Positions 1,306 through 63,806 of a DNA stretch of 64,000 bases are shown here, piece by piece. The notes under the pieces are model-generated. The model did no database searches. It saw nothing but the letters and a program-made list of their open reading frames with translations, and was not told the DNA's origin. Numbering within the stretch: the stretch's first letter is position 1; the number at the start of each line of letters is the position of its first letter. Both the position numbers and the translations under genes were made by a program. This DNA is from Leucoraja ocellata (taxonomy: Eukaryota), in contig JAWMAR010001270.1 in the NCBI GenBank assembly GCA_036785375.1, positions 62,001-126,000 on the forward strand, written 5' to 3'.

Positions 1306-1360
1306 ATGACAGTGGAAGCATCATTTCGGTACATGGCCCTTCTGGTGACAGTTTGGCAAG
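1306..1360 (+). CDS. G1 leader exon MTVEASFRYMALLVTVWQ
   Basis: 55 nt, phase-1 donor G|gtact; same length and similar sequence as the G3, G4 and G5 leaders. Confidence 0.85.
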
Positions 1361-4300
1361 GTACTTTTAGATATATGTGCCGGTCCATCATATTCAATTC
1401 TGTTTTAGAATACTCCATTTAGTTGCCCACTGTGAATTTAGTTACAGTGCTTCTCCAGCTCGCTTGTCGCTAATTCTAATTTACTGTTGTAATTTTCAAC
1501 TCTTGATTCATTTTCCTTGTCCAGTTTGTGCAACTGTTTTCAGTGTTTTTCCTTAATTTCTGGCAGCCAACGAAGTAACTTCGACCAAAGTGGACCAATT
1601 CCCGAAAGAGCTGACAGTCCACAGAGGAGGCAATGCGTCCATGTTCTGCACGTTCTCAATACAACAAGTTACTCTTGATGTTTCTTGGTGGAGATGGGGA
1701 GAGAAGACATTTATAGAACCAGACAGCAGAAAAATAATTTCTACCAAAAAGGGCAGTGGGGATTTTGTTCTCCTGAATGCAAATGTAGCGGACTCCGGGG
1801 TTTATTATTGTAAAGTGAAACATCAGCAGCAATCTATCGGAGATGGAGCTGGCTCCAGGCTGACTGTAATTGGTAAGTATCCCATGACGGAGAGAACGTA
1901 AGCTCTCTATAGTATAAATTATGCTCTCTAATGTGAATAACATCACATTTTATCGCTGGGTTAAAACTGGATGATTACTAATAACTGTATTTTATGTTAT
2001 GAATTCAAACCACTCCGCCGACTTGAAATCTGAAATGTCTGGAAATAATTAGCTGATCGGGCAGCATGTGTGTGGCGAGGGAGGGTTGTTCTCGTTTTTC
2101 GTGCTTCCAGGGGGCCTTTTCCTTTGTCCTTCTGTAGTCGCGCTGCTATCGCCCACGATTCAGATTCACTCTTCATCATTCCCACGGTGCTCAGTGACCA
2201 CATTGTTTTTCAGTGAAGATGCTCAAGCCACTTGGATATTTAATCTGGACTGTGGGAAGTATGGCGGCTTTTTCCTCACGGGAATCATTTTAACACATTG
2301 AGTCTGGGTCTGTTCTTATGTATAATGAAAAGTCACCATTCCAGGCCAACTGTGGCTACAACCTCCCCAGAACTGTGTCCACCCACAGTCCACACACAAT
2401 CTTACCCTTTTTGACGCAACCGCTACAAATTGTCTACCCAGTATTTGTTATAACTAATTTTCAGAAATCTATTAGTTTTATCCTTAAAGTCAGGAAACGT
2501 GTGAATAAAGGGAGCTCTCATGATTTGGATGTAATAAAGATAGACAAAAAACGCTGGAGTTACCCTGCGGGACAGGCAGCATCTCCAGACTGAAGAAGGG
2601 TCTCGACCCGAAACGTCACCCAATTATTTTTTCTAGAGATGCTGCCTGTCCCGCTGAGTTACATTTTTGTGTATTCGAGCATTTTTATTTAACCGCCAAA
2701 TATCTGTAAAGCACGAACAGAATGTAATTGTCTTTTGAGGAAACACCAGTGCTCCTGTCCTTGCAAATCGTGGTTTCCATTTACACGACCCTCGGTTGAA
2801 ATGCCTACAAGTAAAACGGCGCTGTCACTGAACTTAGCAACAAATATTTATTCCACGTAAAATAATCTGTTTTTGTGCCATGGAGAAACTGAGTTTTAGT
2901 TGGTAGTGCACTCGCTGAGGTTGGGAATAAACACATAACTCTCTTCCGAAGGCAATAATGATCCTGATTCAATAACTTGTTAGTACAAAAATGGAATGTA
3001 AGAAGATTTAAAAGTTAGATGTTCAACAGATTGCTTGTACTGGGCTCACAATACACCTGTCCTTCCAGCTAAACACTGACTAGATTTAACTGAGAAAGAT
3101 CAGTGTTCGTAAATGACAAATATGGAGTTCGGTTCAATAGAATCTTACTTACATGTAAGTAATCGAGCGTTCAATATATCGAGCAAATTTAGAAAAGGTC
3201 ATAGATATAGATAAAATGTGTTGCCACATTGGAAGTCACTTTCACGTTCTATCACCTTTATTTGTTATTATCAACCAATTGTCAGTATAACTCAATCATA
3301 CCGTATATCGCGGCCTGGAAAAGGTTTTCCTTGTGAAAGTTACTTCATCTGAACTCTCAACCCCAGTCTGGCACATGTGACAATTAAATGTATCTTGAAT
3401 CTTGTATCTTGAACTATTATGGGGCCAAACCTCAGATCGATAGATGTAGCCAAACCCTGCCCCTCGACCATATGCATTGGCGAGATGTGAATATATACAG
3501 GGCTGGATTCGTTAGGATTCGTTAGTCTGTGTGCAGTTTAACAATCTCCTCGCAAATTCGTGGTTTTTCTTCCGTTGCTACGCTAACTTACCCATTGCCA
3601 ACTTTTCGCTGGTTGGTAGGGTAGCCAGTGGTAAATTATCCCGTGATAATTGATTGTGGTGGGGAAGAATGAGGACAGTTGATATGGATGCGACAGGAAA
3701 ATTGGATAAATTAATAGGAGTTTAATAGTCAGCGTGAAGGCGACACCGGGCCTGTATCATTCTTTGCAACAAACATGTAAAACACAGTCATTGCTGGCGT
3801 AATTACTAAATATTGCTGTCAGCTTCTTCGGCGCGCTAAATCTGGCACTTCCATTCAGAACAATGGGACATTCTCCGCATATTACTTAAATCGAAAATCA
3901 CATTCCTATGTGTTCCTTGAATGTATTTTACTGTCCATGGTAAGACGAACTATAAATCAGTGACAAATCCATGAGTTTAAAAGTGAACGTACCGATAACC
4001 CATGTGGTCATGATACTGCAATGTCTTCACAAGCCGTATGACAGAGTATTCATTGACATGGAAAGAAGACATCCAACATAACTTGTTTTCCTTCTGTTAC
4101 AGCTCCGCCAACTCCCCTGAGCATTAGCCAAGTTAATGGCAGTTCGCCGCCAAAACTTGTGTGTCAAACGGCTGCCTTTTCCCCGAAGGAAGTCAAAATA
4201 TCCTGGCAAAGAAATGGTGTAACAATTTCCACCGGGGAAGAACCTGTGAACAACAGTAGCGTGGAGGGATTGTATGTGGCTTCCAGCTTTCTCGAAGTAA

Positions 4301-7300
4301 CAAAGCCTACCTGGCGCGTTGATATTTACACCTGCCTAGTGTCACATGTCTCCCTTGCGGTCCCCGCCAGAGTTGACTACACCGTCAAGCCAGGTAAGAC
4401 TGGCAAACAGAACTGGGAACAGAGGGAGACCTCCGATCCGATTTAGAAATTATATCTGGCCGAATACTGTACGTGTAGTAGTAAATGTTAACCTATTTAT
4501 TCACAGTAGAATATCGATGTGCAAGCAACCTAATGCATCATTTAGCGCTATATTTTCTCAATTAGAACTGCGACGATTAATTAATACGTTTAATGTATAT
4601 CGTGCGTGTGAAACAGCAAACTTTCAGGCACTTGACCGTGGTGTAGCAAGCAAACATTCAACTCTCGACTACAAAGTGACATAGTATGACGAATGGGGAA
4701 GGAGATTGCTCTGAACAAGACATATTTTCTTTAAGACAGGAAGTCGGCTTTTAACGTTTGTATTAAGGCGATAAATTTCACTTCCCAGAGATACGCGAAT
4801 CTTTGTAATTCCGTACCTCGGAACATCACAGATCCATAATGTTGTATTTCAGAGCTGAGATCAATAGTTTTTGAAAATGATGATCAAGGGCAACAGGTGC
4901 ATAGGAACGCGCCATCTCCTGCAAATTCCCTTCCGAGTCACACACCATCATGACTTGTAAATAAATCGGCCGTATCGTCGCTTGGATTTGATCTTGGAAC
5001 TCCCTACCCAATAACACTGGAATTATCTTCGAGAGGACTGCAGTGATTCACTGCACTGCCACACTGTGAAGGACAAGTATGAATTGGGAATACTGTATGT
5101 GCTGGCCTTGTCAGTTTACCCAGATCATTTGTGTTTTAAAATCAAAAGGTATGAACAATGGGCAAGAATTGGATTATAATCGAGGAACGACCACAATCTT
5201 GCACCCGGAGAGGTCATCTGACCTTATTCTCTAGTCCTTATAAGTTTACCAACATGAAATGTCACTATATTCGTCTAGTTGTATTCAAATGTAATTATTC
5301 TCATCCGTTTACTGTCCATGATGCAACCAACTACCCACACTATGCCCCTCAATGCCCTTCTGGCTTATAACCGCCCCTTAAATGTTCTACCATTTCTACC
5401 AAGTATCATATGTGCCAGGAGCAGGTAAGTAGGAGGCAAAGGAGATTTCTTTTTAAATGTTTCCAGCATCTGCAAAGTTCTGGAGATACTTGGCATCCCT
5501 GGTAGCTTCTGCGGAGGGTAGCTGAAGAATGGTCACTACTCGAAACGTAATTTCCCTCCAGCAGTGCAACTAAGCCTGTTGAGTTCCTACGACAGGCAGC
5601 TGGGACTAGCTCGGTTGGGCAACGTGCTCGGCATGGGTGAGTTTGGTGGAATGACCGGTTTTCGTGCTTTGACTCTCCTAATTTCTCATAATCTGCGATT
5701 TGGAGGCAAATCTTGTTGGAAGGCCTGCCTGTTTCTTGAAATATTTTAACACGTTAAAGGCTTGCAATCCCGCACGGAAATGTAAATTGCTTTTGTTACA
5801 CCTTAAAAGCTGTAGAATCAGGTGCTATATGCCAGTCCTAAAATATGGAATCTGCTAAGATAAAAGCAAGTCTCACTTTATACTTCATAAGTAACTTTCA
5901 TACAGAGAGAGAAGCTCACTGGATCATTGTGTGACACGGTTTACGTGTTTACCATACATCTGTGTTGGAAGGAACTGCAAATGGTGGTTTACACTGGTGT
6001 AACAGCGGGCCAAGCAGCATCATCGAAGAGAAGGAATGGGTGACGTTTCGTGTCAAGACACCTCTTCAGACTGAGAGTCAGTGGAAAGGGAAACTAGAGA
6101 TATGGAAGGTTACAAAGAGATGTCAGCTGAAAATGACAGATCAAAGCAGACGATATATATTTATTCGCTAACTTGCAAATAATGCAATTCGTTCCATTCG
6201 GTATATATTGGAATGCTTGTACACCAAGGATTAAAAAGACACATTCGGAGTGCTCTGCCTTCCTGACTCCTAATTTCTCACCAGTTTCTTGGTTTATCTG
6301 TTTTACAGTTTTAAATGTATCTGCTTCTCCTGCAGACTCTAATCTCGCACTGATTCTCGGATGTGTACTGGGCGTATTGGCAATTTTAATCCCGATTATA
6401 ATTTTGATAGTACTCAGAATAAAGGCAACAAATGGTAAGACCGTTATTTATTTTTGCCAATTGCTTTAATATCCTTACAGTATTTCAGAAAACAGGAACA
6501 TTGAATTAATAAATGTCGAGTGCAGAAGAAGAAACATTGTAGGTCATCATTAGGTGATCATTAGGTCATCATTAGGTGATCATTCACATAACAAAAACAT
6601 TATGACAGTTAACTATTGAAATGTGCTGGAACATTTTATTTTTTTCAAAATTCGAATTATTCGCTCATCGACTGCGTCTTTATTTCACATCTAAGAGGAA
6701 TTGTTCATACATTACATTTTATTCTTTAAAACTATTGAATCTTAAGGAATTTGATATGGATCTTGACTTTGTTTGTGAGCAACCTGCTCTAACTTGCCAC
6801 ACTTTTTATTTTCATTGTAATTTTGGAATGTGACACGGCTGCTGACACGCTATCACCATTTGATAATTTAATTCAAAGTCATGTTCGATTACATATTACA
6901 GACTATGCGAAGTTAATACACTAACACAAGATTGCAAAAACCGCTATTGCTAAACGGTTTCAAATATAACGGCGCCATCAGGAGTTCTTACTTTAGCCAA
7001 TACATTTGATTATCTTCAAAGACACAATATTCATTTTGTTGTCTTGTTTTCTTTAGATGTTAATAAAAATTCGATGGAATCAAGTCGAAGTGCAGAAACG
7101 GTAGGGTGCAATGCTCTTAGTATTGCCATTTTTTTTCAAAAATGTTCTTTAGCAAAGATTTTAATTTCATTGAGTAAAATCTAGAATTATTGTGGCACAG
7201 TGGAAGCTGTCCTGTTTATATCAACCTTGCATTTTCGAGTAATTACCAATATTATTTTCAATTTCAAAGAATGCACTCCAAATCATTAACGTTAAGTCAC

Positions 7301-13300: not shown

Positions 13301-15036
13301 CTTTGGGCAGCACCTCTATTGCTGCACCACTGTGTGAATAGGGTAAATATTAGTCAAACCCTCAATCAGTGATCAGACACAAATATCTCAACAGGGGACT
13401 TTGCATAATCTTGTACCCTGATGTTTGAGCACTACTCGAATTTATCAACCATTCTTAGTCTTGGAATCCAAAAACTCAGACCAATTACATTTCTTTATAT
13501 AAAAAAGGATATTCATCTGGTTGGCCTATACTCTACCGCTACATCAGAGAATCTGGTGCTTCTGTACCCATGAACTTGCGACTGCATTGTCACAGGACAA
13601 TGAGTACTGTAGAAGCTGTACTTTGTCCAGGCGCAGCCACTCAGCACTGAGATGCGGGGATCATGAATGCATCTTGCAATGAATGGGCTCAACAGCTGAA
13701 AATGGGGCTGCTTCATTGGTTGAGAGGGGCCCCGTCTCATCAGCACATCTAAGATCACAAAAGAATCTTGATGAACTGGGACAATGGGCCGAGGAATGGC
13801 ACATGGAGTTTAATGCAGAGGTTTTACATTGTCAAGACAAACTTGGACAGGGCTAATACAATAAATGGTAGGCCCTGGGGAGTGCTGTAGAACAGAAAGA
13901 CCTAGAAGTACATAGTTCCATGAATATGGTGATGCAGGTAGACAGGGTGCTGAAGAAAATATTTGGCATGCATGTCTTCATGAGTCAGGTTGAGTACAGG
14001 AGTTGGGACATGTTATTGCTGGCTAAGATGTTGGTACGGTCACATTGAGTACTGTGTACAGTTCTGGGGTGAAAATACAGCTATTCACCAGGATAGGGAG
14101 AATGGGGTTAAGGTGGGAGAGGGATATTAAAGGGGCCTTTGGAGCAACTTTTTCACCAAAAGGGTGATTCGCGAGCAGCCAGAGGAAGTGCGAGGCAAGT
14201 TCAATTACAATATACAAGACACTTGGACAGGTTCACGGCTCGATAAGGTATGATACATACATACTTGGGCCACAAAGCGACTTCCATCACAATTAGCAGG
14301 AGGTGAGGGAGGATTTGTAGGGCGCCCAGCTGTTTTTCTGTAGCAATGACCTGCACTCACTGGATGTCTCACTGTATCTTGCATAACAGCACACTGTATG
14401 ACACTCGCCTCCCTGTTCGCCCCATCCCACCCGATAGCAGCACACAGACAGCCATTGAATATTTAAAATGGCTCCTTCCACATGGGCTAGTCTGCTACTG
14501 GGTCACTGACTTTTGCATCGCCTGGTTGTGCCAGAGGCGAGTCGTGTCCATAACCAGGAACCCGGCCCTGCAAGCCTGGTTGTAACAGGCCATGTATAAA
14601 CACGACTTGCTTTCTGGGAAGGAACACCGAACGCTAGTTGAACGCCGAACTAATGTATTAGCATGCTGAAAAAGTAGTACTTTAAATCTTTACCTACACT
14701 TCCTAGGAGATTACACTAGCAATAACCTAGTATGAACATTAAGTGCAAAAATAAATATTGCTTTATAAATACAATTAAAAATTGGAGTAAGAAAAAATAC
14801 TTAAAGTAACTATCTTATACTAATCAATGATCGATATTTGAAAACAAAATCTATTCATGTATTTACTAACATCCGATATTTAATGACTTTCACAGACTAA
14901 AGGAAGCGAAGCTGACAAGCCTACTTACGCTGCTCTGCAGTTTTCCAAATCAATTAAATCAGCACCTAAACCCAAGAACGAACACCCAGTCTACGCAGAT
15001 ATAAATATTTCAAAGGGGAAACGGTACTGTGAATGA
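1306..15036 (+). CDS. G1: VJ-C1-TM IgSF receptor (SIRP/NITR-like), join(1306-1360,1567-1872,4103-4393,6336-6434,7057-7100,14896-15036), 311 aa; possible extra mini-exon 14622-14654
   Basis: All introns are GT-AG with compatible phases (1,1,1,1,0). Most exon sizes match paralog G4. The joined frame is open from ATG 1306 to TGA 15034-15036. Confidence 0.85.
1567..1872 (+). CDS. G1 V-J Ig exon
   Basis: Acceptor tggcag|, Cys-B (MFC), Trp-C (VSWW), DSGVYYC, J-like GDGAGSRLTV, donor G|gtaagt; 306 nt. Confidence 0.95.
2590..2620 (+). ncRNA. Minimal hammerhead ribozyme motif in a Penelope-type short repeat (other copies: 12962-12992 -, 23201-23231 -, 39266-39296 -, ~6039-6069 -, ~10585-10615 +)
   Basis: CTGAAGA core, stem II GGG-TCTCGA-CCC, GAAAC-GTC cleavage triplet with palindromic ACGT. 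Confidence 0.65.
4103..4393 (+). CDS. G1 C1-set Ig exon
   Basis: LVCQTAAFSPKEVKISW...GLYVASSFL...YTCLVSHVSL is the C1 signature; ttacag| acceptor and G|gtaaga donor. Confidence 0.95.
6336..6434 (+). CDS. G1 TM exon DSNLALILGCVLGVLAILIPIIILIVLRIKATN
   Basis: Uncharged hydrophobic run with basic stop-transfer residues; 99 nt, phase 1-1. Confidence 0.9.
7057..7100 (+). CDS. G1 cytoplasmic exon 1 DVNKNSMESSRSAET
   Basis: Polypyrimidine tract plus tttag|, 44 nt, donor gtaggg; same size and phase as G4 exon 48265-48308. Confidence 0.75.
7940..8535 (+). mobile_element. Decayed Penelope-like element fragments
   Basis: VLGLLH...KLVEQHLIIHLGSFT..SGMNI resembles the C-terminus of Penelope ORFs; related pieces lie at ~21190-21480 and ~37300-37590. 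Confidence 0.55.
8641..10450 (+). mobile_element. Young 5'-truncated CR1 LINE (family A, TTTCTATG tail) with uninterrupted RT ORF (8609-10351)
   Basis: NYRPVSLTS, QHGF, LDFQKAFDKV, GVPQGSVLGP and FADD motifs; microsatellite tail; TSD (g)tatcc at 8635-8640 and 10450-10455. Confidence 0.95.
10850..14230 (+). mobile_element. Old fragmented near-full-length CR1 ORF2, interrupted by younger repeats
   Basis: APE motifs LNCIYFNARGL (~10850) and DIVAITETWL (~10915); RT motif PQGSVLGPLLF (~12620); many stops and frameshifts. Confidence 0.75.
14896..15036 (+). CDS. G1 terminal exon TKGSEADKPTYAALQFSKSIKSAPKPKNEHPVYADINISKGKRYCE*
   Basis: ctttcacag|ACTAAA start shared with the G2, G3 and G4 terminal exons; two Tyr motifs homologous to the G4 ITIM and ITSM. 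Confidence 0.85.
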   Translation, partial: TKGSEADKPTYAALQFSKSIKSAPKPKNEHPVYADINISKGKRYCE

Positions 15037-17297: not shown

Positions 17298-17516
17298 AAC
17301 ATAGAAACATAGAAACATAGAAATTAGGTGCAGGAGTAGGCCATTCGGCCCTTCGAGCCTGCACCGCCATTTAATATGATCATGGCTGATCATCCAACTC
17401 AGTATCCCGTACCTGCCTTCTCTCCATACCCTCTGATCCCCTTGGCCACAAGGGCCACATCTAACTCCCTTAAATATAGCCAACGAACTGGCCTCAACTA
17501 CCCACTGTGGCAGAGA
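17298..17516 (-). mobile_element. CR1 family A 3' fragment inserted in the G2 C1 exon
   Basis: (CATAGAAA)n tail; GTTTA duplicated at 17293-17297 and 17517-17521. Confidence 0.9.
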
Positions 17517-17708
17517 GTTTACACCTGCTTGGTATATCATGTTTCCCTTGAGGTGCCAGCAGCTCTCAGCTACACCGTCAAAAAAGGTAAGATTGTAATT
17601 ACTTGCAGACAAGAGCGGGTGTATATGTCCAACCTGGTTAGAATTTAAATATACAGCTGCTCAAACACGGGGACAATGGCTAGATACGACCCGTGTTTAT
17701 TCGTAATG

Positions 17709-27040: not shown

Positions 27041-27045
27041 TAATG

Positions 27046-40648: not shown

Positions 40649-40753
40649 TGTTACCCTTTCTCTGAGAGCATGGGACGATGTGCCATTACCTGACGCATTA
40701 TAAGTCAAGATGAAACGAAATGATTCAAAAATATTATCTGTTTCATCATTCTT

Positions 40754-44000: not shown

Positions 44001-44149
44001 GGCCGAACTATGACCTCTCCCGCCGCACGAGCCACAGTCGTGGGATATATTACGTCACGGTCACGTTTCATATATTTACTCATAATTTCCTTTTCCGCAG
44101 AGCAAGTTTTGAGTAAACTAACAACAAGTTGGCAATTTATTCTTGTAAC

Positions 44150-47100: not shown

Positions 47101-50100
47101 ATTTGCATGAAAGCAACACTTGCATGCTGTTTAAAATGAATTGCACTCCATCAGTTCTTGTAAGGAAATCCGTGTGAGATGAATCGACAAACTGAATTGA
47201 TATAATGATTGTAATGAGCAAAAACGTCCTGGGATATGCATATATCTACTGTCTGGTGAAATATATGAAGATAAAGCCTAAATTCCGTTTAACGTCAGTA
47301 AGCAGCTTTCCACACATGGGCACAATACAACGGCAATTGTTTGTCCTGTGGATTCCATTACTAACTTCCATCTGGTGCCTCATGATATACCTTCCAAACT
47401 TTCCGATGTGGGTATTAAAATGCACCTACGAAATGATTTGCCTTGTTGACTTCCGTTTGTATATTTGTTCTGAAATGTATAAATTCTTTACAGTTTCTTA
47501 ATTTTCAGTTCCTTCATCAGGAATTGATCGCAAACAGATGATCGTATATGCAGTAGGTGGATCAGTAATTTTAATTCTGATTACAATCGTGATAAGACTC
47601 AGCTTAAAGATATGGCACGGTAAGAATCTTGATAATAATCATACAATAATCATTTCTATGGTTAAAACGAGAATGTATATGTCAATGGTGTTTGCTCACA
47701 GAGGAGAAAAGGAAACGTAGATGGACATGTAAAGAAATTTCTGAAGCCGGTTTTGATATATGTGTGTGATAATATGATGGATCTTCAAATTCAATTATTT
47801 CAGCTTGGAATTGGATGTATTCAATTATCACCTATGCATATATTTTCAAATATAAGGAATTTTTCAAATCCAGTGTGATTGATAATTAATGCAATGGAAG
47901 ATTACGATTTTGAGGAAAAAACAACTGTGGCTTTCTGTGGCAATGAGCAAAACCAAACATCTCCATATGTTTACATGACATTGCTGTTTCGACATGGACA
48001 CGGTTCCTCATAAACCATTACAATTTTAAAGTTTCAGTTAAAATTTAGGTCCAGTGGGCGCAACATCACGAAAGAGTACAAGATGCGTTGTATTGTTATA
48101 ATTGTGACAATTGGTGCTGCTGAGCACCATCGGATATTTAAAAATGCAATCGTTCTTATTTTCTGCAGTAAATTTGATTAAAATGAGAAGAATAATGTCA
48201 AAATCTACAGATCAATCTTTACAATTCAAGTTGTTTTTATGTAACTCTTATTTCATTCCTCTAGGCCATAACGTAACCTCTGTAGGAATACGTCCGAAAG
48301 GGGAGCCGGTAGGTGAAATGTCTCCTCGTGTTTCAAAATAGGGATTATTCGTAGCAGAAATATTATAAATCAGTTTTATTCTATAGTATCGTGGAATACT
48401 CTAGGGCAGGATGAAACCATTATTTATTTTTCAGGTTACGTCAAGTATACATCCACTAATAATTTGAAAATTCCTGTTGTATCTGCTTCAACATCTTTTG
48501 ACAATTCCATGCCAGATCATATCCTAATTTATTCTAGTGAAAGGTGATGTTTAGGATGAAAATATGAGCCTTTATTAGTTCTGGTGGCAGGAATACTTAA
48601 AAATATACGGTACGGTAATTAAAATAAAAATGAAAAGAACCTTTGTCGAGAATTTAATTTGCTTTCTTGAGCCGTTCTTTAACGTGTTAATTGCAGTTTT
48701 GGCTTCGATCCTTAACGAAGGGCCATTTAACCGGATATCGTGGATAGGGGAGAACCAGTTGATGTGGTGTATCTGGACTTCCAGAAGGCTTTCGACAAGG
48801 TCCCACATAAGAGATTAGTATACAAACTTAAAGTACGCGGCATTGGGGGTTCAGTATTGATGTGGATAGAGAACTGGCTGGCAAACAGAAAGCAAAGAGT
48901 AGGAGTAAACGGGTCCTTTTCACAATGGCGGGCAGTGACTAGTGGGGTACCGCAAGGCTCAGTGCTGGGACCCCAGCTATTTACAATATATATTAATGAT
49001 CTGGATGAAGGAATTGAAGGCAATATCTCCAAGTTTGCGGATGACACTAAGCTGGAGGGCAGTGTTAGCTGTGAGGAGGATGCTAGGAGACTGCAAGGTG
49101 ACTTGGATAGGCTGGGTAAGTGGGCAAATGTTTGGCAGATGCAGTATAATGTGGATAAATGTGAAGTTATCCATTTTGGTGGCAAAAACAGGAAAGCAGA
49201 CTATTATCTAAATGGTGGCCGACTAGGAAAAGGAGAGATGCAGCGAGACCTGGGTGTCATGGTACACCAGTTATTGAAAGTAGGCATGCAGGTGCAGCAG
49301 GCAGTGAAGAAAGCGAATGGTATGTTAGCTTTCATAGCAAAATGATTTGAGTATAGGAGCAGGGAGGTTCTACTGCAGTTGTACAGGGTCTTGGTGAGAC
49401 CACACCTGGAGTATTGCGTACAGTTTTGGTCTCCAAATCTGAGGAAGGACATTATTGCCATAGAGGGAGTGCAGAGAAGGTTCACCAGACTGTCAGGACT
49501 GTCTTATGAAGAAAGACTGGATAGACTTGGTTTATGCTCTCTAGAATTTAGGAGATTGAGAGGGGATCTTATAGAAACTTACAAAATTCTTAAGGGGTTG
49601 GACAGGCTAGATGCAGGAAGATTGCTCCCGATGTTGGGGAAGTCCAGGACAAGGGGTCACAGCTTACGGATAAGGGGGAAATCCTTTAAAACCGAGATGA
49701 GAAGAACTTTTTTCGCACAGAGAGTGGTGAATCTCTGGAACTCTCTGCCGCAGAGGGTAGTCGAGGCCGGTTCATTGGCTATATTTAAGAGGGAGTTAGA
49801 TGTGGCCCTTGTGGCTAAGGGGATCAGAGGGTATGGAGAGAAGGCAGGCACGGGATACTGAGTTGGATGATCAGCCATGATCATATTGAATGGCGGTGCA
49901 GGCTCGAAGGGCCGAATGGCCTACTCCTGCACCTAATTTCTATGTTTCTATGTTTCTATGTTTCTATATGGCCTACATGGCATCGAAACTGCTTCCCACA
50001 AAATTACTATTTTGTGCTGGCTGCTAAATGGAATCCCACAAATGGATCTTCCACTCTGCAATGCTTAGAAGAAGAAATCTCCAAAATCTGCAAAATACTG

Positions 50101-52006
50101 ATATTCGTATTGGCACTGGTTAATTATTGTCATGTACACCGAGATTCAATTATAAACTTTATTTTGCGTGCAATCCGGAAAATGGATACCATATATGGGT
50201 ACAATCAAACCATACCCAAGTGCAAAAAGGGAAATGACACAGGGTGCAAAATATTGTGTTACAGCTAAAGAGAAATTCCACATTTTAAAAGCGCAAGGAC
50301 CAGAACGAGGTAAATCACAGATCAGGATTGCACCATTAGCTTGCTTGACGCCTGTTTAGTAACTTGATAACATCGAGTATAAAGCCGTTTTTAAATCTTA
50401 CACAAGGCGATTTCAAGCTATTTGTATTCTGTCTGAGGGAAGAGGAGAGAATGACGGAAGCTGGTTTACGTGGTTGGCTGGGCTGCAATCACAGGTTCCT
50501 GCGTTTCTTAAGGTCCTGGGCAAAGCTGTCGCTAAACCAATTTGGGATTCATCCCCATATAATTATTTAGACAGTGCAGCTGTGGAATTTGGGAAGAGAC
50601 TTTGGAGACCGTCCAACTTTCCTTGGTCCTCTGGGAAGGTCGAGGCAACGGTGTGCTTTCATGGCGTTAGAATTAATGTGGTTGGACCAGTGCAAATTAT
50701 TGGTGATGTTTATCGCCAGGAAACTCGACCAACACCATTATCCACCCCTTCCTTGAAATGACATAGTTGGTAATATAATTGAAAGCAAGTGAAATGTTAA
50801 TCTATTCCTCTATATCCCGCGTGCATCGATTTTCAGCCCCAGTTACACTTCTAGTGCCATATCAGCTATATAAGCCTGGTCACCCGCAGTATTAAATGTA
50901 CTTTTCTAATAGGTGAGACAAGCACCAATTGAACATACCGCTGCCTATGCTACGCTGAATTTAAGCGAGAGCAAAGGATTTTCAAATGGTCTACAAGAAG
51001 AACAACATGTCGCCTATTCACAGGTAATGCTCTTGGACAGCGTAATTAAGATATGGAATGAGCATTGTTCCAAATGTAGTTGCTTTTCCCAAACTGCAGG
51101 GAAAATATAAGTGCACAATGGCAAATCTTCATTTAAGTAAAACCTATCACCCGCTACTCATCAGAGCATAAATATAATTTTCCTTTCCTTATTCGGGTTT
51201 AAATTCAAATGTAAATTGTATGTGAAGAAATAAAGGGTGGGAAGCTAGGAACACACAAACCTACCCAGTTCTCATAATCAGGGCGAAATTAAATACAAAT
51301 GCAAGACAATGGCCTGGGAAAAGAGAGTAAACAAGCCGTTCAAATTATCCACCGAATAGGGGATTCGTGTCAAAAACTGGGGACGCAGAGCCATAGGAAG
51401 TAGTACCAACTTATATTCTATTGCATTTCGGTGCCACTGATGAAGAGGTGAGCCGCGGTGTCTATTGGAGAGGTACCGGTAGCTTCAGTCTGCGAACCAC
51501 CTCTTGGGCTCGACAGGCAAAATGGATTCCCGCCAATCCCACAAATACACTTTAAAAGGGGCTTCGTATTATGCCAAATATTTAATACTGCGGATACAAT
51601 TTTGAGCATTCACCAATTCTCCTAACTTTCGTAATTACATCGAAGTTGACATAAACGAAAAATAAAATAATTCTTTTGTGGGACAAGAACAGCTCCTCGC
51701 GTTTAAACTCAATATCAAGCAGAAAGGTATAGCCAAAAATAAATCTGCAAATCAATACCATTGTAAAAATAACAACTGATGGGTTGCATAAAATATTATT
51801 TTAAAGCAGTATGCTCAAATTCGTCACTGAATGATTGCCTAATCACCGATCATTAATTACTTTCGCAGACTAAAAGAGGTGGACATGACAAGCTGACCTA
51901 CGCAACTGTGCAACATGACAACCCCAAGAAAACGTCAGCATCCAAACAGAACAACAAATACACGGTGTACGCAGATGTGAATACTTCAACAAAGACGTGT
52001 AACTGA
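44150..52006 (+). CDS. G4: complete inhibitory VJ-C1-TM-ITIM/ITSM receptor, join(44150-44204,44398-44703,46695-46988,47521-47619,48265-48308,50913-51023,51869-52006), 348 aa
   Basis: Seven exons, all GT-AG, phases 1,1,1,1,0,0, 1047 nt open frame. The tail carries AAYATL, VAYSQT, LTYATV (ITIM) and TVYADV (ITSM). AATAAA at 52014-52019. Confidence 0.9.
44398..44703 (+). CDS. G4 V-J Ig exon
   Basis: MYC...VNWW...DSGLYYC...IGNGSGSLITVF; 306 nt. Confidence 0.95.
46695..46988 (+). CDS. G4 C1 exon
   Basis: LVCKTGAFYPEKLEIFW...YTCLVSHVSL; canonical splice sites. Confidence 0.95.
47521..47619 (+). CDS. G4 TM exon
   Basis: GIDRKQMIVYAVGGSVILILITIVIRLSLKIWH, 99 nt. Confidence 0.9.
48739..49965 (+). 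mobile_element. CR1 family A RT fragment in a G4 intron
   Basis: Near-identical to 9217-10450, with one stop (49343-49345) and a 12-bp deletion; TSD ATAT. Confidence 0.95.
50095..50750 (-). mobile_element. Decayed Rex1/Babar-type LINE 3' fragment
   Basis: Similar in layout to 55010-55880. Confidence 0.5.
50913..51023 (+). CDS. G4 cytoplasmic exon 2 VRQAPIEHTAAYATLNLSESKGFSNGLQEEQHVAYSQ
   Basis: tttctaatag| and CAG|gtaatg; phase 0-0; two tyrosines. Confidence 0.85.
51869..52006 (+). CDS. G4 terminal exon TKRGGHDKLTYATVQHDNPKKTSASKQNNKYTVYADVNTSTKTCN*
   Basis: tttcgcag|; canonical ITIM and ITSM. Confidence 0.9.
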   Translation, partial: TKRGGHDKLTYATVQHDNPKKTSASKQNNKYTVYADVNTSTKTCN

Positions 52007-57270: not shown

Positions 57271-60124
57271 CTTACGTTTGCACACACGTTTGATCATCTT
57301 ATGTTCCTTCACACATGTCACCTTTTTTGATTCACGTTTTCTTATTCATCTTACCATAATAACTATTCTTTGTGTATTAAAAATGTGAGCCTGAAATAAC
57401 TAAAAGGAAACACATTTACAAAGATGATTCTTGAACAATTATAACTTTTAAAAAGTTACGTCGCACATTGCATTGACCGGGAACAAACTCCATGGACTAT
57501 ACACCTTCCCAATGCTGGTCTTTAAAAATTTGGCATCACAAGTTGTCAAGTGCTCAAATCTCCAAGAATGCAACAATTTTAAGTTAGCAGTCATACTGTA
57601 AAGAATTCTATTTTTTGTCTGCGAATGTAACAGATTAATACTTGGGAGCAAGGAGCTAGTTAATTCCTGAATTTTAACAATGGAAAGAGGATATAACATT
57701 TTTGCTTATAGTCACATATGGCACCACGGAGAAAGGCAGCAGAGGAATGCACTATATATTGTAAGCGAAAAAGAATGCAATCAAAGATTCAGTTGACTAT
57801 GGGTTTCCCTTTCTAAATTCCTTGTGTGAAGAATTAGACGATCCGAATCAATAGCGAAAAACTCTTAATGGTACGCCGCCCAATTGCCATCTAGTGGATG
57901 ATCAAATCCTTATCAACAACATCACTTGCTGTAATGTATCTCATTTAAATGCTGCAATTGAGGCTTGGAGTTTTTGGCTGAAATGAAAGAAATTCGCAGC
58001 GGGACTAACTCAAAGGTCATCACACCCTCCTGCATTCTAGGTGGGATAATCTGTGACAGAAATATACGAGGCTGAATAGTTGACAGCTCTGTCATCTTAT
58101 GCTCCGGTAGGACAAAGTCTCAATTTGAGAATGAGGTAGAGGTAAATGGATTTCAATATGTGTTGTCCAAACGCGGTGCACCTACAATGGCTGGGAGAGA
58201 AATCATTTTGGAGTAGGAAATCGAAGAAAACATATTTCCTAGATCATACTCGCTGAAATATAAATATACTCAAAATGCATCACGATGCCTTAGTCATGTG
58301 ATTTACGGCGTTGGTGTCACACGCTTCAGGCATTCTATGAAAACCTATTTCTTATGCACACCCTTCTATTTTGCAGTATGCCGGTGAAAGCAGTGGTTCG
58401 GTACATGGGTCTTCTTGCTTTGCTTTGTCAAGGTATGCTTAGTTTCTGTACCGATTTCGCTAAGCAAATCATATTTGACAATATTTTACACTAGTATGCC
58501 ACAGTAAATTAAATTTACAACGTTTCTACAATTGGCTTACCATTATTTCCTAATTGTTTTGTATTTGTGTATCCATTGGCTCTTTTTCTTGGTGCTGTAT
58601 GTACAAATGTTTTCATCATATTTACTTATTTCTGCCACTGACAAAAGCAACTTCGAACAAAGTGGAACAATTCCCCGCAATCCTGAAGGTCCCCAGGGGC
58701 AGAAATGAGACCATGTTCTGCAAATTTCCAATATTAAAATAAACCGCTGACGTTTCATGGTGGAGAGAGGGCGAGAAGACATTTATAGAATCGGACAACA
58801 GAAAACAATTCAAAGTAGGCAAGGGAAGGAGTACATTTACTTTATTGAATGTGAGTGTCGATGACTTCGGGATGTATTACTGTCGAGTGAAACATATCGG
58901 CAATGGAACTGGCTCCCAGCTAATTGTGTTAAGTAAGTGTCTTTGTTACGAATAGTGGGGTATGTTCTTCTGTTGCAATGTTACTAAAGCTTCCTGGTGG
59001 TGGAAATATTAATCTTAACTAGCTCTATAATTTTAATGGTTACTTCCGAGATGGAAATCTGAAATAAAGGGGAAATACTGAAAAATATTCCATCCGTCGG
59101 TCAATATAAGTTCAGCGAGAGTTCTGTTATAGTTTTGTTTTATTTACTCCGGGTTATGTTAAAAAGTCATAGTGACGTTACCCTGGTTATGGCTCTTGTA
59201 AATTGGCAGGTCACTTTATATTTTGACCTCCAGCTTTTCAAATACCCAACCAAATTCACGTTACTCCGAATTTCCAGAAAGTTGCAAATTTCCCACGCCG
59301 ACAAACTTTCACATCAACTAAAAACGGAGGAGAAATTGATCTCACAGTTTTGAGGTGGATAATTTTGTTTTCACATTCACTGTCTCCAGGAAAGTTCATG
59401 GAATGAAAAAAGAAAAGAAAGAACTACAACTGAAATTCTCCGATATTATTTCTTTGCTTGGTAATCATTTATATGGCACAGGGAGTAAAATGTAATATAT
59501 CTTTATTAATTAATAATTATAGTACAATGAGATGTTATTACAGAAATGAAGGAAAATACATATGCTTAAACAGAAACGAGGTGATTACGCAATGAATTGA
59601 CAAAAAAAGGTACAATTAACTCTCCCGCTCGCTAAATATTACTGACAGTGGCTCCAGCACAAATGGAACCATGGTCGTTAATGTCTTGTTAATAAAATAT
59701 ATGAAATGAGAAACAGAGTTTGCTCCGTTCATCCTTGCGTGCTTTTCGAGAAAAGCAGTTGTCGCCGATGTACTTCTGCCATTCAGTGCAGTCCATTTTC
59801 TGTAACTACCATATGCACATAAGAAAGAGCAAATGTTCAGAAGAAATGCGTGATTTTGAATTCAACATAAAGCACTGTCACGGAATCTTACCAAGCAATA
59901 CCTACCCGTGTCACATTCCTTCATAATAATCGCGCTAGGCAGCACTCCATTCATGCTTTGTTTCAATTACACTACTTACCTTGATATCCTCCGTAGAACA
60001 AAATTATAAACTCAACAAACAACCACACGGATAACAGGAGGCAGCAGCAACGGTTCAGCGACAATTATGTTCATTGAAATAAAATATATTTTGCAGCTTC
60101 ACGCTTTTATTTTTATTGTTCCAG

Positions 60125-60421
60125 CTCCCCCGACTCCATTGAAAATTGTTGCTATTGAAGGAAGTGCACCGCATTTGCCGCAACTCGTGTGTAAAACGGC
60201 TGCGTTTTATCCAGAGGAATTAGACGTAATCTGGCAAAGAAACAACGTGGAAATTTTGACCGGCATTGAAACCGTGAGAAACAGAACAGCGGATGGACTT
60301 TATGAGGCTTCCAGTTTTTTGCACGACACGCAGCCTGCGCCAGGCAAAACTGTTTACACCTGCCTGGTATCCCACGTATCTCTTACAGCCCCTGCCAGTT
60401 TCAGCTACATTGTCGAGCAAG
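60125..60421 (+). CDS. G5 C1 exon (intact)
   Basis: LVCKTAAFYPEELDVIW...GLYEASSFL...YTCLVSHVSL; ttccag| and G|gtaagc. Confidence 0.9.
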
Positions 60422-60475
60422 GTAAGCCGGGAGGCATTTAACGTAGACTTCAGCCTGCCGAGAAATACAATCCGA

Positions 60476-61430: not shown

Positions 61431-62395
61431 GTGTATCGTCTGCGAACAAGGGTCTAGATCCGATTCCTTTACCCCAGAGATGTTGCCTGTCCCGCTGAGT
61501 TACTCCAGCTTTTTTGTGTCTATTTTCTAATACAATTAGATAGTTGTGCAAACACAAAAATCCAGTTCCTTTTCATATTTACTGGAACCTGTGGCGGCGG
61601 GTCCAGGGTGTCAGACCCAGAATATAAAATGCATTCTGACTTTGTAAACTGTTGTCAAACTACCGGGCGTAGTTTTGTAAAATAAAAATTAACACACATC
61701 TTAACATAATAACCAAACCGCAGCAAAGAGCCGCCGTATAATGTGATCTGTTCTATAAATTCGTCATTACAGTACAATGCGTGCCATGTGGCAGTCATAA
61801 AATCTTTGTGCAGAAATTATTGAAGCAGCGGTGAATTTCGTGGGCGAAGCTTGGCGCTTCGTTGTGCTTATGGCTGGCAGAACAGGGAAATTCAGCCGAT
61901 AGTATGAAATAAATGAACTTTGTACCTTCATTTATTGATCAGTGGTATTTTGAACTTGGGGCCAAAGTACTGCGTTGTAAAAAGAAATAAAATCCTTTTA
62001 TCTTAATAAGCAAACCTCTTTACAATCTGCCGCAGTGTGTGTGATTTGTTCGTTCGGTACATTCCAATATTACCTTACAATTCATGGGCAATGGAGGACC
62101 CGGCGTGGGGAGACCGCCGTGAGGCAGGGGGGAGGGAGGAGAACAACTGGGGACCTGACGCGGGGGTACTTTGTATGCGCCCTTTATGGGCGACTATTTG
62201 CGTACCCTGGGTAGGCAAGCAAAGAATTTCACTGTGACGTGTCACATGTGACGACGAAGTATTGAATCTGGTATTTATTGCATATTTTATGCAGGGAGGG
62301 TGGATAGATACCTTAAAATGCACTGCTTTTTTGTCTCCCTATTCCTGAATATGTGTTCCTATGGTTCACAGTTTCTTATGTTTCGCCAGATCCAG

Positions 62396-62497
62396 AAACC
62401 ACTGACAAAACACAAATTATTGGATGTGTAGTGGGCGGACTAGTAATTGTGATTCTGATCATATTTTTCACAAGATTCGGATTAAAGGCGCAACCGG
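62396..62497 (+). CDS. G5 TM-a exon ETTDKTQIIGCVVGGLVIVILIIFFTRFGLKAQP (alternative acceptor at 62390)
   Basis: Hydrophobic, family-like sequence; donor G|gtaaga. Confidence 0.85.
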
Positions 62498-62866: not shown

Positions 62867-63704
62867 CAGTCAAACACTGAATCTGAATAGAAAATTATTT
62901 CATCTGCCCCACACCTCCCTGGCATCACATATAACCCTTAAAGGTTCCTTCCAGTTTCAACTATTTGGTCAAACGAGGAAATGCAGGAAGCATTTTAAAC
63001 GAGTTCTACATCAGATTAGAAATACAGCTGCGTAGTTGTTCAAACACGAGAGATAGAAGTGTGAATTGTATTATTTGTGATGAAAGACCAACGTGCAAGC
63101 AGCTCAAAAACTAATACCTCATTCAATGCATCCCGACTGAGATGAATTAACAACCTGAATTTATGTGCGGCTTATTTCATAGTAAACAATCGTGAGTATA
63201 TAGGACTGCGCGGCCAGATTCGGCTCAATATCCATCTACAAATTTGTAGACGACACCACGGTTGTGAGCATGATCGCAGACAGTGGCATGTGCGTGTGTC
63301 CCTAGTTCTCGAATTCACTCTTAACCCCCTCTTTTACATCACCCATTGCTAAAATACGTCGTTACATCTTCACGGTGTCTGCACGCGTGTCCTATTATGT
63401 GGATCGATGACAAATTATACTGTTCAATGCTTCTGTTTTTTTTTTAAACTGATGTCTAGTGTAACAATATGAAAAAATAAATCTCTTCTTAACCTTAATC
63501 AATTATCCCCTACAGAAAGAGCTACTTTGTAAAGTGACGCGTTTGCTTGATAATTAAAACATTAACCCATAATTGTTGCAATATGTATTTCCGACAATAT
63601 TTTTTGGTGGGTTGGAGCGTTACTTTTCAATGCTCTGCCTTATTAGCTTTTACTCCCTGTATAATTAATATGTCTTACGGTTTCTTATTTTTCACCTAAT
63701 CCAG

Positions 63705-63806
63705 AATGTACCTATAAAATACTGATTCTCACACGTGCAGTGGGCGGGTTGGTAATTTTACTTTCGATTATAATTTTGACCAGATTAGCATGGACGGCAC
63801 AACATG
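63705..63806 (+). CDS. G5 TM-b exon ECTYKILILTRAVGGLVILLSIIILTRLAWTAQH (Arg in TM)
   Basis: atccag| acceptor, 102 nt, G|gtaaga; homologous to TM-a; not reported in the ORF track. Confidence 0.8.

What the first reader, a model, noticed from the sequence alone, without database searches (positions are those of the whole stretch)
1306..63806. Cluster of non-rearranging VJ-C1 receptors: antigen-receptor-chain-like ectodomain on an inhibitory tail
Seen: five tandem paralogs, four with a V exon that already contains a J-like GxGxGSxL/IxV G strand, followed by one C1-set domain, a TM exon and Tyr-motif exons. No RSS lies at the V ends. Known: one VJ plus one C1 is the ectodomain of TCR and Ig light chains. 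SIRPs are VJ-C1-C1, NITRs are V-I, and NKp30 is VJ only. Inference: a diversified innate or NK-type receptor family of cartilaginous fish that resembles the proposed pre-RAG antigen-receptor precursor. It shows birth-and-death evolution, with inhibitory, tailless, pseudogene and possibly activating members. I cannot verify that it is undescribed.
Basis: partly seen in the sequence, partly recalled or inferred. Interest (0 to 1): 0.92.

Follow-up and report, generated by a model that had tools for sequence, protein, structure and literature searches.

The report
Shark-ray SIRP-like V-C1 receptor gene cluster
This stretch of a ray-like cartilaginous fish genome holds a tandem cluster of immune-receptor genes whose outer part looks like one chain of an antibody or T-cell receptor but needs no gene rearrangement, and they belong to a large, uncharacterised family found in sharks, rays and chimaeras.

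Summary
The + strand carries five tandem paralogs. There are four V exons with a built-in J-like strand (one has an in-frame stop), five C1-set exons (one broken), transmembrane exons and Tyr-motif exons. No RSS lies at any V end.

The genes belong to a large family found across Chondrichthyes. A profile search gave 49 hits, and all 48 that carry a name are from sharks, rays, skates or chimaera. RefSeq holds full-length models of leader-V-C1-TM-tail under inconsistent automatic names: SIRPalpha-like (14), NCR3LG1-like (11), Ig lambda-like (9) and others. So the models are public, but nine paper searches found no description of the family.

The V domain is compact, with 53 residues between the cysteines, and folds like CD79b, VNAR, PD-1 and TCR V. 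C1 is a true C1-set domain. G4 has a four-tyrosine tail with an ITIM and an ITSM. G1 has two weaker motifs. G2 is a pseudogene. G3 is a duplication chimera with a degenerate tail. G5 has an Arg-bearing alternative TM exon.

Four RNA runs gave zero reads on G4 exons, so expression here is unproven. SIRP orthology was not shown. The scan has noted this family on other pieces of this genome.

My reading is a SIRP-like paired receptor family, a new variant of a known kind.

The parts
1306..1360 (+). G1 leader exon (ATG, hydrophobic, phase-1 donor)
1567..1872 (+). G1 V exon with J-like G strand (GDGAGSRLTV)
4103..4393 (+). G1 C1-set exon
   Evidence: Pfam C1-set E 1.7e-11; splice sites
6336..6434 (+). 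G1 transmembrane exon
7057..7100 (+). G1 small cytoplasmic exon, 44 nt, phase 1 to 0. Its peptide resembles the same exon of ray RefSeq models.
14896..15036 (+). G1 last exon with two Tyr motifs (PTYAAL, PVYADI) and a stop. With the exons above it gives a conceptual ORF of 311 aa without internal stops.
17062..17586 (+). G2 C1 exon remnant: a frameshift in a poly-A run and a 223-bp retroposon tail insertion (17297-17519). No V exon was found for this gene.
18404..18496 (+). G2 transmembrane exon
19710..19859 (+). G2 last exon with degenerate motifs (FAVTQL, VPYADG)
18314..33572 (+). First copy of a tandem duplication of about 15 kb. Its partner is 33700-48080, 91-96% identical.
29637..29691 (+). 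G3 leader exon
29873..30178 (+). G3 V exon with J-like strand
32221..32514 (+). G3 C1-set exon
   Evidence: Pfam E 6.2e-13
33035..33145 (+). G3 TM exon of G4 type
33790..33882 (+). G3 second TM exon, a copy of the G2 TM exon, lying beyond the duplication junction
35109..35258 (+). G3 last exon, a copy of the degenerate G2 tail
44150..44204 (+). G4 leader exon
44398..44703 (+). G4 V exon with J-like strand. It was folded with pLDDT 91.
46695..46988 (+). G4 C1-set exon
   Evidence: Pfam E 5.3e-12
47509..47619 (+). G4 transmembrane exon
48265..48308 (+). G4 candidate small cytoplasmic exon, 44 nt. It is inferred only: same length, phase and donor type as the G1 exon, about 50% identical.
50913..51023 (+). 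G4 tail exon A (AAYATL, VAYSQ)
51869..52006 (+). G4 tail exon B with an ITIM (LTYATV), an ITSM (TVYADV) 23 residues later, and a stop
58648..58932 (+). G5 V exon with J-like strand but an in-frame TAA at 58740-58742
60125..60421 (+). G5 C1-set exon
   Evidence: Pfam E 2.8e-9
62390..62497 (+). G5 TM exon a (uncharged)
63705..63806 (+). G5 TM exon b with an Arg two residues before the GG. The homologous acceptor is mutated and an AG lies 5 nt downstream.

Best explanation
The window holds part of a tandem cluster of germline-joined V(J)-C1 type I membrane receptor genes. The cluster belongs to a large multigene family found across Chondrichthyes. Each intact gene is built from these exons: leader, one compact V domain whose G strand is already J-like, one true C1-set domain, a transmembrane exon, a 44-nt cytoplasmic exon, and one or two Tyr-motif exons. 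I read the family as a SIRP-like set of paired immunoreceptors. Long-tailed members (G4, and more weakly G1) would bind a ligand through the V domain. Their ITIM/ITSM tyrosines would then be phosphorylated and recruit SH2 phosphatases to damp the cell. Members with an Arg in the membrane span and a short tail would couple to an acidic adaptor and activate; the G5 alternative TM exon and several RefSeq relatives are of this type. The cluster evolves by birth and death. G2 is a wreck. G3 is a chimera made by a 15-kb duplication that joined a G4-type V-C1 to a G2-type degenerate tail. G5 has a stop in its V exon. Shown here: exon anatomy, domain types, absence of RSS, family range, duplication history. 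Inferred: splicing in this species, the G4 44-nt exon, signalling, ligand, cell type.
For: Exons, phases and domains. No RSS. G1 and G4 give conceptual ORFs of 311 and 352 aa without internal stops (counts only). Full-length relatives with the same order of parts exist in RefSeq for Mobula, Hypanus, Hemitrygon, Heterodontus, Heptranchias, Callorhinchus and others. All 48 named hits of the 49 profile hits are chondrichthyan, and the 49th is an unnamed Logan contig. E-values jump from 3e-38 to 2e-8. Tail: G4 has LTYATV and TVYADV 23 residues apart. The relatives share the pattern ..YAxLNL....YSQ|TK.., KLTYAALxL, xVYAxV. Among 50 relatives, 23 have tails of 60 aa or more, and 14 of those carry at least one canonical ITIM or ITSM. 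By my reading, 11 of 49 TM-bearing relatives have an Arg inside the span, mostly with short tails. Compact V: C27 to C81. The V model has pLDDT 91.1 with a bulge at GSG and no C'' strand; its Foldseek neighbours are CD79b, VNAR, PD-1 and TCR V-alpha. C1: the best structural match is the MHC class II beta2 domain, Z 15.6, rmsd 1.5 over 97 residues. SIRP likeness: the ESM Atlas nearest clusters are SIRPalpha at 0.96, SIRPalpha 2wng scores E 5.5e-26 with the family profile, and 14 of 49 RefSeq names are SIRPalpha-like. Birth and death: and the C1 tree.
Against: No expression evidence. Four RNA runs were read at about 1, 5, 6 and 25 in 100. They gave zero depth on the G4 C1, TM, tail A and tail B exons, and only the retroposon part was covered. 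Tissues are unknown, and I could not verify that the RNA runs are of the same species. The G4 reading frame needs an exon that I only inferred; without it, TM spliced to tail A stops after six codons. G1's two motifs have Pro at -2 and are not canonical ITIMs. SIRP membership is not shown. These genes have one C1 domain, not two. SIRPalpha is not among the 60 best of 73 PDB sequence hits of the V exon, nor among the top 50 fold hits of the V model. The family profile scores UrIg2 and antibody chains as well as or better than SIRPalpha. Searches with the tail alone reached no SIRP. The best two-domain structural match is B7-H6, a ligand rather than a receptor.
Confidence: 0.6

Rival explanations
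1. The family is the chondrichthyan co-ortholog of the SIRP family proper. It descends from the same ancestral gene as tetrapod SIRPalpha/beta, and has lost one C1 domain and shortened the V domain.
For: The ESM Atlas nearest clusters are 'SIRPalpha' and 'PTPNS1-like' at 0.96. The most frequent RefSeq name is SIRPalpha-like, 14 of 49. It combines a VJ domain, C1-set domains, a four-tyrosine tail and charged-TM partners. Two RefSeq models (P0064, P0176) carry two near-identical C1 domains. SIRPalpha 2wng scores E 5.5e-26 with the family profile.
Against: There is one C1 exon per gene here. The V exon does not find SIRPalpha among the 60 best shown of 73 PDB sequence hits, nor in the top 50 fold hits. 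Searches with the tail alone found no SIRP of bony vertebrates. The automatic names disagree with each other. No synteny or phylogeny with true SIRPs could be done here.
Confidence: 0.3
2. The family consists of B7-type ligands, B7H6/NCR3LG1-like or butyrophilin-like, shown on cells for VJ receptors such as NKp30. They would not be receptors themselves.
For: 11 of 49 RefSeq names are NCR3LG1-like, and others are PD-L1-like or CD276 homolog. The best two-domain structural matches are B7-H6 (Z 15.4, rmsd 3.3, 188 residues), a checkpoint regulator, butyrophilins, PD-L2 and B7-H3. Weak Pfam hits go to butyrophilin and CD80-type C domains, E 1e-3 to 2e-2.
Against: The C domain scores far better as C1-set (E down to 6e-13) than as a B7-type C domain. 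Its best structural match is MHC class II beta2. The V model matches receptor-type V domains (CD79b, VNAR, PD-1, TCR V), and no B7-family V domain is among the rows shown. The conserved J-like strand, the ITIM/ITSM pairs and the Arg-TM partners are features of paired receptors. No B7-H6 chain is among the 60 best PDB profile hits.
Confidence: 0.1
3. The cluster in this window is largely non-functional debris of the family. None of the five genes here would make a protein, although relatives elsewhere do.
For: There were zero RNA reads on G4 exons in four runs. G2 is broken, G5's V has a stop, and G3's tail is degenerate with no linking exon found. G4 needs an unverified exon. Retroposons fill the introns.
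Against: G1 and G4 keep open frames over 311 and 352 codons with consensus splice sites. G3 and G4 C1 exons differ at only 6 of 291 nt and leaders at 0 of 54, while the V exon differs at 21 of 303, which is not uniform decay. The RNA sampling was shallow and the tissues are unknown.
Confidence: 0.15

Closest known systems
SIRP family (SIRPalpha/beta/gamma; PTPNS1, SHPS-1)
   Same: A non-rearranging V domain with a J-like strand is followed by C1-set domain(s) and a single TM. The inhibitory members have several tyrosine motifs in the tail, and partners with a basic residue in the TM exist. SIRP as V plus two C1-set domains, ITIM signalling and DAP12 pairing: passages of PMC12975943. Language-model features place the family nearest to SIRPalpha clusters.
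   Different: These genes have one C1 domain instead of two. The V domain is compact, 53 residues between cysteines, with no C'' strand. No detectable tail homology was found. The V exon does not find SIRPalpha among the PDB hits shown. CD47 binding and synteny are untested.
UrIg / UrIg2 of elasmobranchs
   Same: A non-rearranging single-exon VJ is followed by a C1 domain in cartilaginous fish. UrIg2 (9dmx) is the best PDB hit of the family profile, E 4.5e-35, and its V-C1 stretch scores 57.6 bits.
   Different: UrIg2 is V-C1-C2-C3, forms antibody-like disulfide-linked dimers and is reported from elasmobranchs only (abstract and passages of PMC12227049). The genes here are V-C1-TM with signalling tails, and the family also occurs in Callorhinchus. 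The high total score of UrIg2 comes partly from its extra C domains.
Ig light chains and TCR chains
   Same: The ectodomain has the same composition, one V with a J strand plus one C1. Foldseek with a full-length relative lists antibody light chains and TCR beta chains in the top 50, E about 1e-14. Light chains score about E 1e-23 with the family profile.
   Different: There is no RSS, and V and J lie in one exon. The V is compact and lacks the C'-C'' region. The tail carries ITIM/ITSM motifs. The TM-scores of the two-domain fit are low (0.25-0.30), so the domain arrangement differs, and the PDB is crowded with antibodies.
B7-H6 (NCR3LG1), butyrophilins and the B7 family
   Same: A V plus C ectodomain with a similar extended arrangement: B7-H6 Z 15.4, butyrophilins about Z 14. 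Many RefSeq names point here.
   Different: The C domain is a clear C1-set. The V matches receptor-type V domains. The family has a conserved J-like strand and paired inhibitory and charged-TM forms.
Other joined-VJ IgSF genes (NKp30, NITR, CD79, CD8, PRARP)
   Same: They share the V architecture of rearranging receptors without rearrangement, as listed in PMC11599192. CD79b is the top fold neighbour of the V model.
   Different: From recall, not tested here: NKp30, CD79 and CD8 have no C1 domain, and NITRs are V-I. The PRARP paper (Fu et al. 2019) is not held, so I could not check its domain make-up or its range.

Membership tests
SIRP family | N-terminal V-set domain with a J-like G strand encoded in one exon | tested here: met
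   Pfam V-set E 4.9e-9 to 7.6e-6, with I-set scoring about as well. The motif lies directly before the donor. The motif is conserved in 40 sequences.
SIRP family | [quoted passage not shown] | tested here: not met
   There is one C1 exon per gene in the window. 2 of the fetched RefSeq relatives (P0064, P0176) have two near-identical C1 domains.
SIRP family | Cytoplasmic tail with tyrosine motifs that recruit SHP-1/SHP-2 (alpha type) | tested here: inconclusive
   G4 has four tyrosines, including one canonical ITIM and one ITSM. G1's motifs are non-canonical. Binding is not testable here. Searches with the tail alone found no SIRP.
SIRP family | Sequence closer to SIRPs than to other V-C1 molecules | tested here: inconclusive
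   Atlas features are nearest to SIRPalpha clusters at 0.96. PDB profile E is 5.5e-26 for 2wng against 4.5e-35 for UrIg2 and about 1e-23 for light chains. SIRPgamma reaches Z 13.9 against B7-H6 Z 15.4.
SIRP family | Orthologous position (synteny) and CD47 binding | not testable with these tools
   The window holds no flanking non-family genes, and the scan notes gave no linkage.
Rearranging antigen receptor chains (IgL, TCR) | V and J as separate segments flanked by RSS | tested here: not met
   V and J-like strand share one exon. No RSS-like site lies next to a V exon; there are 4 loose sites in the window against 1.2 expected.
Rearranging antigen receptor chains (IgL, TCR) | Ectodomain of one V and one C1-set domain | tested here: met
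UrIg / UrIg2 | Antibody-like chain V-C1-C2-C3 with several C domains (PMC12227049) | tested here: not met
   One C1 exon is followed by a TM exon in every gene.
B7 family / B7H6 | B7-type V and C domains | tested here: inconclusive
   The two-domain fit is best to B7-H6. However, the C domain scores as C1-set (E to 6e-13) against B7-type C (E 1e-3 or worse), and no B7-family V domain is among the fold neighbours shown for the V model.
Paired inhibitory/activating Ig-like receptors (functional class) | Closely related ectodomains on either ITIM-bearing long tails or short tails with a basic TM residue | tested here: met
   Sequence level only. 14 of 23 long-tailed relatives carry an ITIM or ITSM. 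By my reading, 11 of 49 relatives have an Arg in the TM, and the window's G5 TM exon b does too.
NITR | V domain followed by an I-type domain | tested here: not met
   The second domain is C1-set. The NITR make-up itself is recalled, not checked.

The most novel reading that the evidence does not exclude
The family is not a SIRP offshoot. It would be the surviving membrane-bound lineage of the pre-RAG VJ-C1 receptor, sister to Ig/TCR chains and UrIg: a germline-encoded, dimer-forming receptor chain. Its V loops would be diversified by gene duplication and patchy conversion instead of rearrangement. On this reading, cartilaginous fish still carry the kind of gene into which the RAG transposon inserted.
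Probability: 0.1. Interest if true: 0.85.

Novelty: new variant of a known kind. Interest (0 to 1): 0.55.

Why it matters
Non-rearranging genes that join a VJ domain to a C1 domain are sought as relics of the gene that the RAG transposon split. UrIg and UrIg2 were published on that ground (PMC12227049, PMC10751288). Here is a large membrane-bound V(J)-C1 family with signalling tails, present in sharks, rays and chimaeras. It sits in the databases under contradictory automatic names, and I found no study of it. If it is the SIRP counterpart, it dates paired SIRP-type regulation to the base of jawed vertebrates. It would also show that a single-C1, compact-V form is old. If it is a separate lineage, it adds a receptor-type candidate to the antigen-receptor origin question. 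Either way it offers testable material: ligand, adaptor, phosphatase binding, dimer state.

Tried and rejected
RNA support: one read-laying run on 46650-52600 with four RNA runs gave no reads on any G4 exon, so it neither supports nor refutes splicing. I chose the 3' half to test the TM-to-tail link, so the V-to-C1 junction was not tested at all.

Tail homology to SIRPalpha: a word-based search with the tail of a Callorhinchus relative found 4 proteins among 42 candidates, all chondrichthyan. An Atlas search with a tail alone gave 0.82, which is chance level.

Synteny: scan notes by place and by words gave no flanking genes and no MHC linkage for this piece.

A transcript lead failed. P0187, a Logan contig protein 97% identical to the G5 C1 exon, turned out to be a genomic read-through of intron plus exon.

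A first candidate for the G4 linking exon at 50041-50082 has no acceptor AG and was dropped.

An automatic count of basic residues in TM spans was too noisy because juxtamembrane Lys and Arg were counted. I replaced it with a manual reading.

No phylogeny with SIRP, TCR, Ig, UrIg, B7H6 or tapasin references was made, because no such reference sequences were on hand as stored proteins. The C1 tree holds only family members and says nothing about outgroups. A V tree was not built.

Papers: nine searches found no description of this family. Subscription journals are mostly not held, and supplements were closed and not asked for. Gene lists in the supplements of shark genome papers (for example PMC8455134, seen as a search listing only) may name these genes. 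Not seen, and known only from reference lists or recall: Fu et al. 2019 (PRARP), Flajnik et al. 2023 (UrIg), Viertlboeck et al. 2006 (chicken SIRP), Hatherley et al. 2009 (SIRPalpha structure) and Flajnik et al. 2012 (B7H6).


Full report
What is there. The window is repeat-rich vertebrate DNA without N. Translating the + strand and searching the exon translations back against the window gives V-like exons at four places. It gives C1-like exons at five places and several TM-like exons. Pfam scores the V exons as V-set, E 4.9e-9 to 7.6e-6, with I-set scoring about as well. It scores the C1 exons as C1-set, E 2.8e-9 to 6.2e-13. Every domain exon is bounded by AG and GT in phase 1, as usual for IgSF genes. 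Leader exons with an ATG and a hydrophobic core lie 200-250 bp upstream of the G1, G3 and G4 V exons.

The V exon. Each V exon ends, directly before the donor, in G-x-G-x-G-S-x-L/I-x-V. Its last eight residues fit the J pattern G-x-G-T/S-x-L-x-V. In a 40-sequence family alignment G93, G95 and V100 are at least 90% conserved. V and J are therefore one exon. It found 4 sites in the window against 1.2 in shuffles, and none lies next to a V exon. The domain is short, with 53 residues between the cysteines (C27, C81). An AlphaFold model of the G4 V exon has mean pLDDT 91.1. It shows strands A, A', B, C, D, E and F, and a G strand split by a bulge at G-S-G. No strand is called between C and D. Its best Foldseek matches are CD79b, shark VNAR, PD-1 and TCR V-alpha, with TM 0.73-0.81. 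All of these are V domains with a reduced C'-C'' region. This supports another scan note that called the domain VNAR-like.

The five genes.
- G1 has a leader, V, C1 and TM. It also has a 44-nt cytoplasmic exon at 7057-7100, whose peptide resembles the same exon of ray RefSeq models. Its last exon, 14896-15036, carries PTYAAL and PVYADI. Counted in a script, the exons make 311 codons without a stop. Both motifs have Pro at -2 and so are not canonical ITIMs.
- G2 is a wreck. Its C1 exon has a frameshift in a poly-A run and a 223-bp retroposon tail inside it, and no V exon was found.
- A tandem duplication of about 15 kb (18314-33572 against 33700-48080, 91-96% identical) copied the 3' part of G2 together with a V-C1-TM unit.
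- As a result, G3 is a chimera: a G4-type leader, V, C1 and TM, followed by a second, G2-type TM exon and the G2-type last exon. The motifs of that last exon are degenerate (FAVTQL, VPYADG), and no linking exon was found.
- G4 has a leader, V, C1, TM, tail exon A (AAYATL, VAYSQ) and tail exon B. Tail B carries a canonical ITIM (LTYATV) and an ITSM (TVYADV) 23 residues later.
- In G4 the TM exon ends in phase 1 and tail A starts in phase 0, so a linking exon is needed. The best candidate is 48265-48308. It has the same 44-nt length, phase and donor type as the G1 exon but is only about 50% identical. With it the frame is open for 352 codons. This exon is inferred, not shown.
- G5 has a V exon with an in-frame TAA, a good C1 exon and two TM exons. 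The second TM exon carries an Arg. Its tail lies beyond the window.
- Reverse-transcriptase ORFs fill several introns.

Recent evolution. Between G3 and G4 the V exon differs at 21 of 303 nt (14 non-synonymous, 7 synonymous; dN 0.061, dS 0.115). The V-C1 intron differs at 2.9%, the C1 exon at 6 of 291 nt and the leader at 0 of 54. The amino-acid changes sit at the A/A' strands, the end of B, the B-C loop, the start of E and the F-G loop. The V exon has therefore diverged more than twice as fast as its surroundings. Because synonymous sites are also raised, patchy gene conversion is as likely as selection. The numbers are small.

The family. A full HMMER search with the G4 V exon gave 422 proteins at E up to 1e-3. 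The top rows are giant multi-Ig proteins that score by summing many weak stretches. The single-stretch hits at 40-59% identity are full-length proteins of 250-410 aa from sharks, rays and chimaera. They have the same order of parts as the genes here, including the junction ...V|PPTPL... and the tail pattern. A word-indexed search with a Mobula member gave 34 hits. A search with a 17-sequence profile gave 49 hits, and all 48 named hits are chondrichthyan. E-values jump from 3e-38 to 2e-8. The RefSeq automatic names of the 49 disagree:
- SIRPalpha-like, 14
- NCR3 ligand 1-like, 11
- Ig lambda-1 light chain-like, 9
- tapasin or tapasin-related, 3
- TCR beta-like, 2
- class II DP alpha-like, 2
- PD-L1-like, 1
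- CD276 homolog, 1
- uncharacterised or hypothetical, 5
- unnamed, 1

Such disagreement is what one expects when no close characterised relative exists. This is an inference. In a C1-domain tree of 54 rows the window's genes lie inside a clade of 23 rows (support 100/99). Apart from one row of unknown species, that clade holds only ray and sawfish sequences. Several deeper clades each mix shark orders, rays and Callorhinchus. So the window probably comes from a batoid, and the family was already diverse early in chondrichthyan history. Among 50 relatives, 23 have tails of 60 aa or more, and 14 of these carry a canonical ITIM or ITSM. One subgroup has a WWIY..C TM and a basic, tyrosine-free tail. 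By my reading, 11 of 49 have an Arg inside the span, mostly with short tails. The window's G5 TM exon b is of that kind. The scan's own notes report the same kind of gene on many other pieces of this genome and directly up- and downstream of this window. I did not check those.

What it is closest to. The family profile against PDB sequences gives UrIg2 (9dmx) E 4.5e-35, many antibody chains, SIRPalpha (2wng) E 5.5e-26 and single light chains about 1e-23. Multi-domain chains gain score from extra C domains, so this ranking does not single out one relative. The single V exon finds Robo and titin I-set domains, a kappa chain, VNAR, the amphioxus IgVJ-C2 protein and CD79a/b among the 60 best of 73 hits, but not SIRP. 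The single C1 exon finds IgM C-mu, beta2-microglobulin/MR1, UrIg2, IgE, class II beta and CD276. A model of the Mobula protein is confident over V and C1 and has low confidence in the tail. With Foldseek it matches antibody light chains and TCR beta chains at E about 1e-14, but with low TM-scores, and that library is crowded with antibodies. With VIA-align the C1 domain alone matches MHC class II beta2 (Z 15.6, rmsd 1.5, 97 residues). The two domains together match B7-H6 (Z 15.4, rmsd 3.3, 188 residues), butyrophilins, PD-L2 and B7-H3. SIRPgamma follows at Z 13.9 (rmsd 5.2) and UrIg2 at 13.1. These values are nearly tied. The ESM Atlas places a Heterodontus member nearest to two SIRPalpha clusters at 0.96, with 205 of 256 features shared. 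That is a lead, not a test. Searches with the tail alone reached no SIRP.

Against the literature. SIRPs are V plus two C1-set domains, with ITIM signalling in alpha and DAP12 pairing in beta (passages of PMC12975943). SIRP, CD79, NITR, CD8, NKp30 and PRARP are listed as joined-VJ IgSF members with an antigen-receptor-like V (passage of PMC11599192). UrIg is called a non-rearranging VJ-C1 gene of the elasmobranch MHC. [quoted passage not shown] UrIg2 is V-C1-C2-C3 (abstract and passages of PMC12227049). Neither of these two papers contains the words SIRP or ITIM. Nine full-text searches found no paper on a chondrichthyan V-C1-TM family with inhibitory tails. The library lacks most subscription journals, and supplements were closed, so this is not proof that the family is undescribed.

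Expression. No RNA run is on record as holding the stretch. I laid four RNA runs on 46650-52600. One was single-cell, one oligo-dT and two were cDNA, from four studies, read at about 1, 5, 6 and 25 in 100. Depth was zero on the C1, TM, tail A and tail B exons and on the candidate exon. Only the retroposon at 48640-50032 was covered, by reads mostly 95-99% alike, that is, from other copies. Tissues are unknown, and I could not confirm that the runs are of the window's species. This result counts against the claim as far as it goes, and leaves splicing in this species unproven. Support for the exon order comes only from RefSeq models of other species.

Verdict. The genes are real members of a large family of germline-joined V(J)-C1 membrane receptors found across Chondrichthyes, most likely working as SIRP-like paired inhibitory and activating receptors. 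Membership in the SIRP family proper is not established: the two-C1 criterion fails here, and sequence, fold and tail tests are inconclusive. The family is public as unnamed gene models but, as far as I could search, uncharacterised. I rate it a new variant of a known kind. The bolder reading, a surviving membrane form of the pre-RAG receptor, is not excluded but has no specific support.

Method note. The window's genes were searched exon by exon. The joined step was left out of all searches and folds. Exons were joined only inside one script, to count codons and stops.

Noticed in passing
window 29873-30178 vs 44398-44703: The V exons of the recent duplicates G3 and G4 differ at 6.9% of nucleotides. 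The intron beside them differs at 2.9% and the C1 exons at 2.1%. Synonymous sites are raised too (dS 0.115), which hints at patchy gene conversion from other paralogs rather than selection alone.
   Followed up: partly
window 6336-6434, 18404-18496, 33790-33882, 62390-62497; relatives: A Cys at the outer edge of the membrane span (pattern I-x-G/A-C-A-x-G-G) is conserved in most family members. It is replaced by Tyr in the G3 and G4 TM exons, and an Arg sits there in G5 TM exon b. It could make disulfide-linked dimers.
   Followed up: no
window 8609-10351, 25504-27646, 48740-49861, also 17297-17519 and 54180-54554: Several copies of one retroposon family, 90-96% identical to each other, carry reverse-transcriptase ORFs (Pfam RVT_1, E 1e-22 to 1e-33). 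They sit in the introns and are heavily represented in all four RNA runs.
   Followed up: partly
relatives P0064 (Amblyraja) and P0176 (Chiloscyllium): Two RefSeq models carry two almost identical C1 domains in tandem, giving a SIRP-like V-C1-C1. This could be a real recent exon duplication or an assembly or model artefact. A scan note reports a C1-exon duplication elsewhere in this genome.
   Followed up: no
relatives P0112, P0137, P0200, P0201, P0202, P0204: A distinct old subfamily has a TM of the type WWIY-x-C followed by a CCK-x-C cluster and a basic tail without tyrosines. It occurs in several shark orders and a ray. This suggests a third, non-ITIM signalling or sorting mode.
   Followed up: no
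window 35800-36290 and 56070-56360: Low-complexity tracts (GT/CA-rich, Gly- or Pro-rich in translation) produce long spurious ORFs on both strands.
   Followed up: no
proteins P0067 (lungfish), P0096 and P0105 (frogs), P0041 and P0053 (turtles): Outside cartilaginous fish, the nearest V-domain relatives in the full HMMER search are arrays of two or three VJ-type V domains without a C1 domain. Their automatic names are SIRP beta-2-like, NCR3 and pIgR-like.
   Followed up: partly
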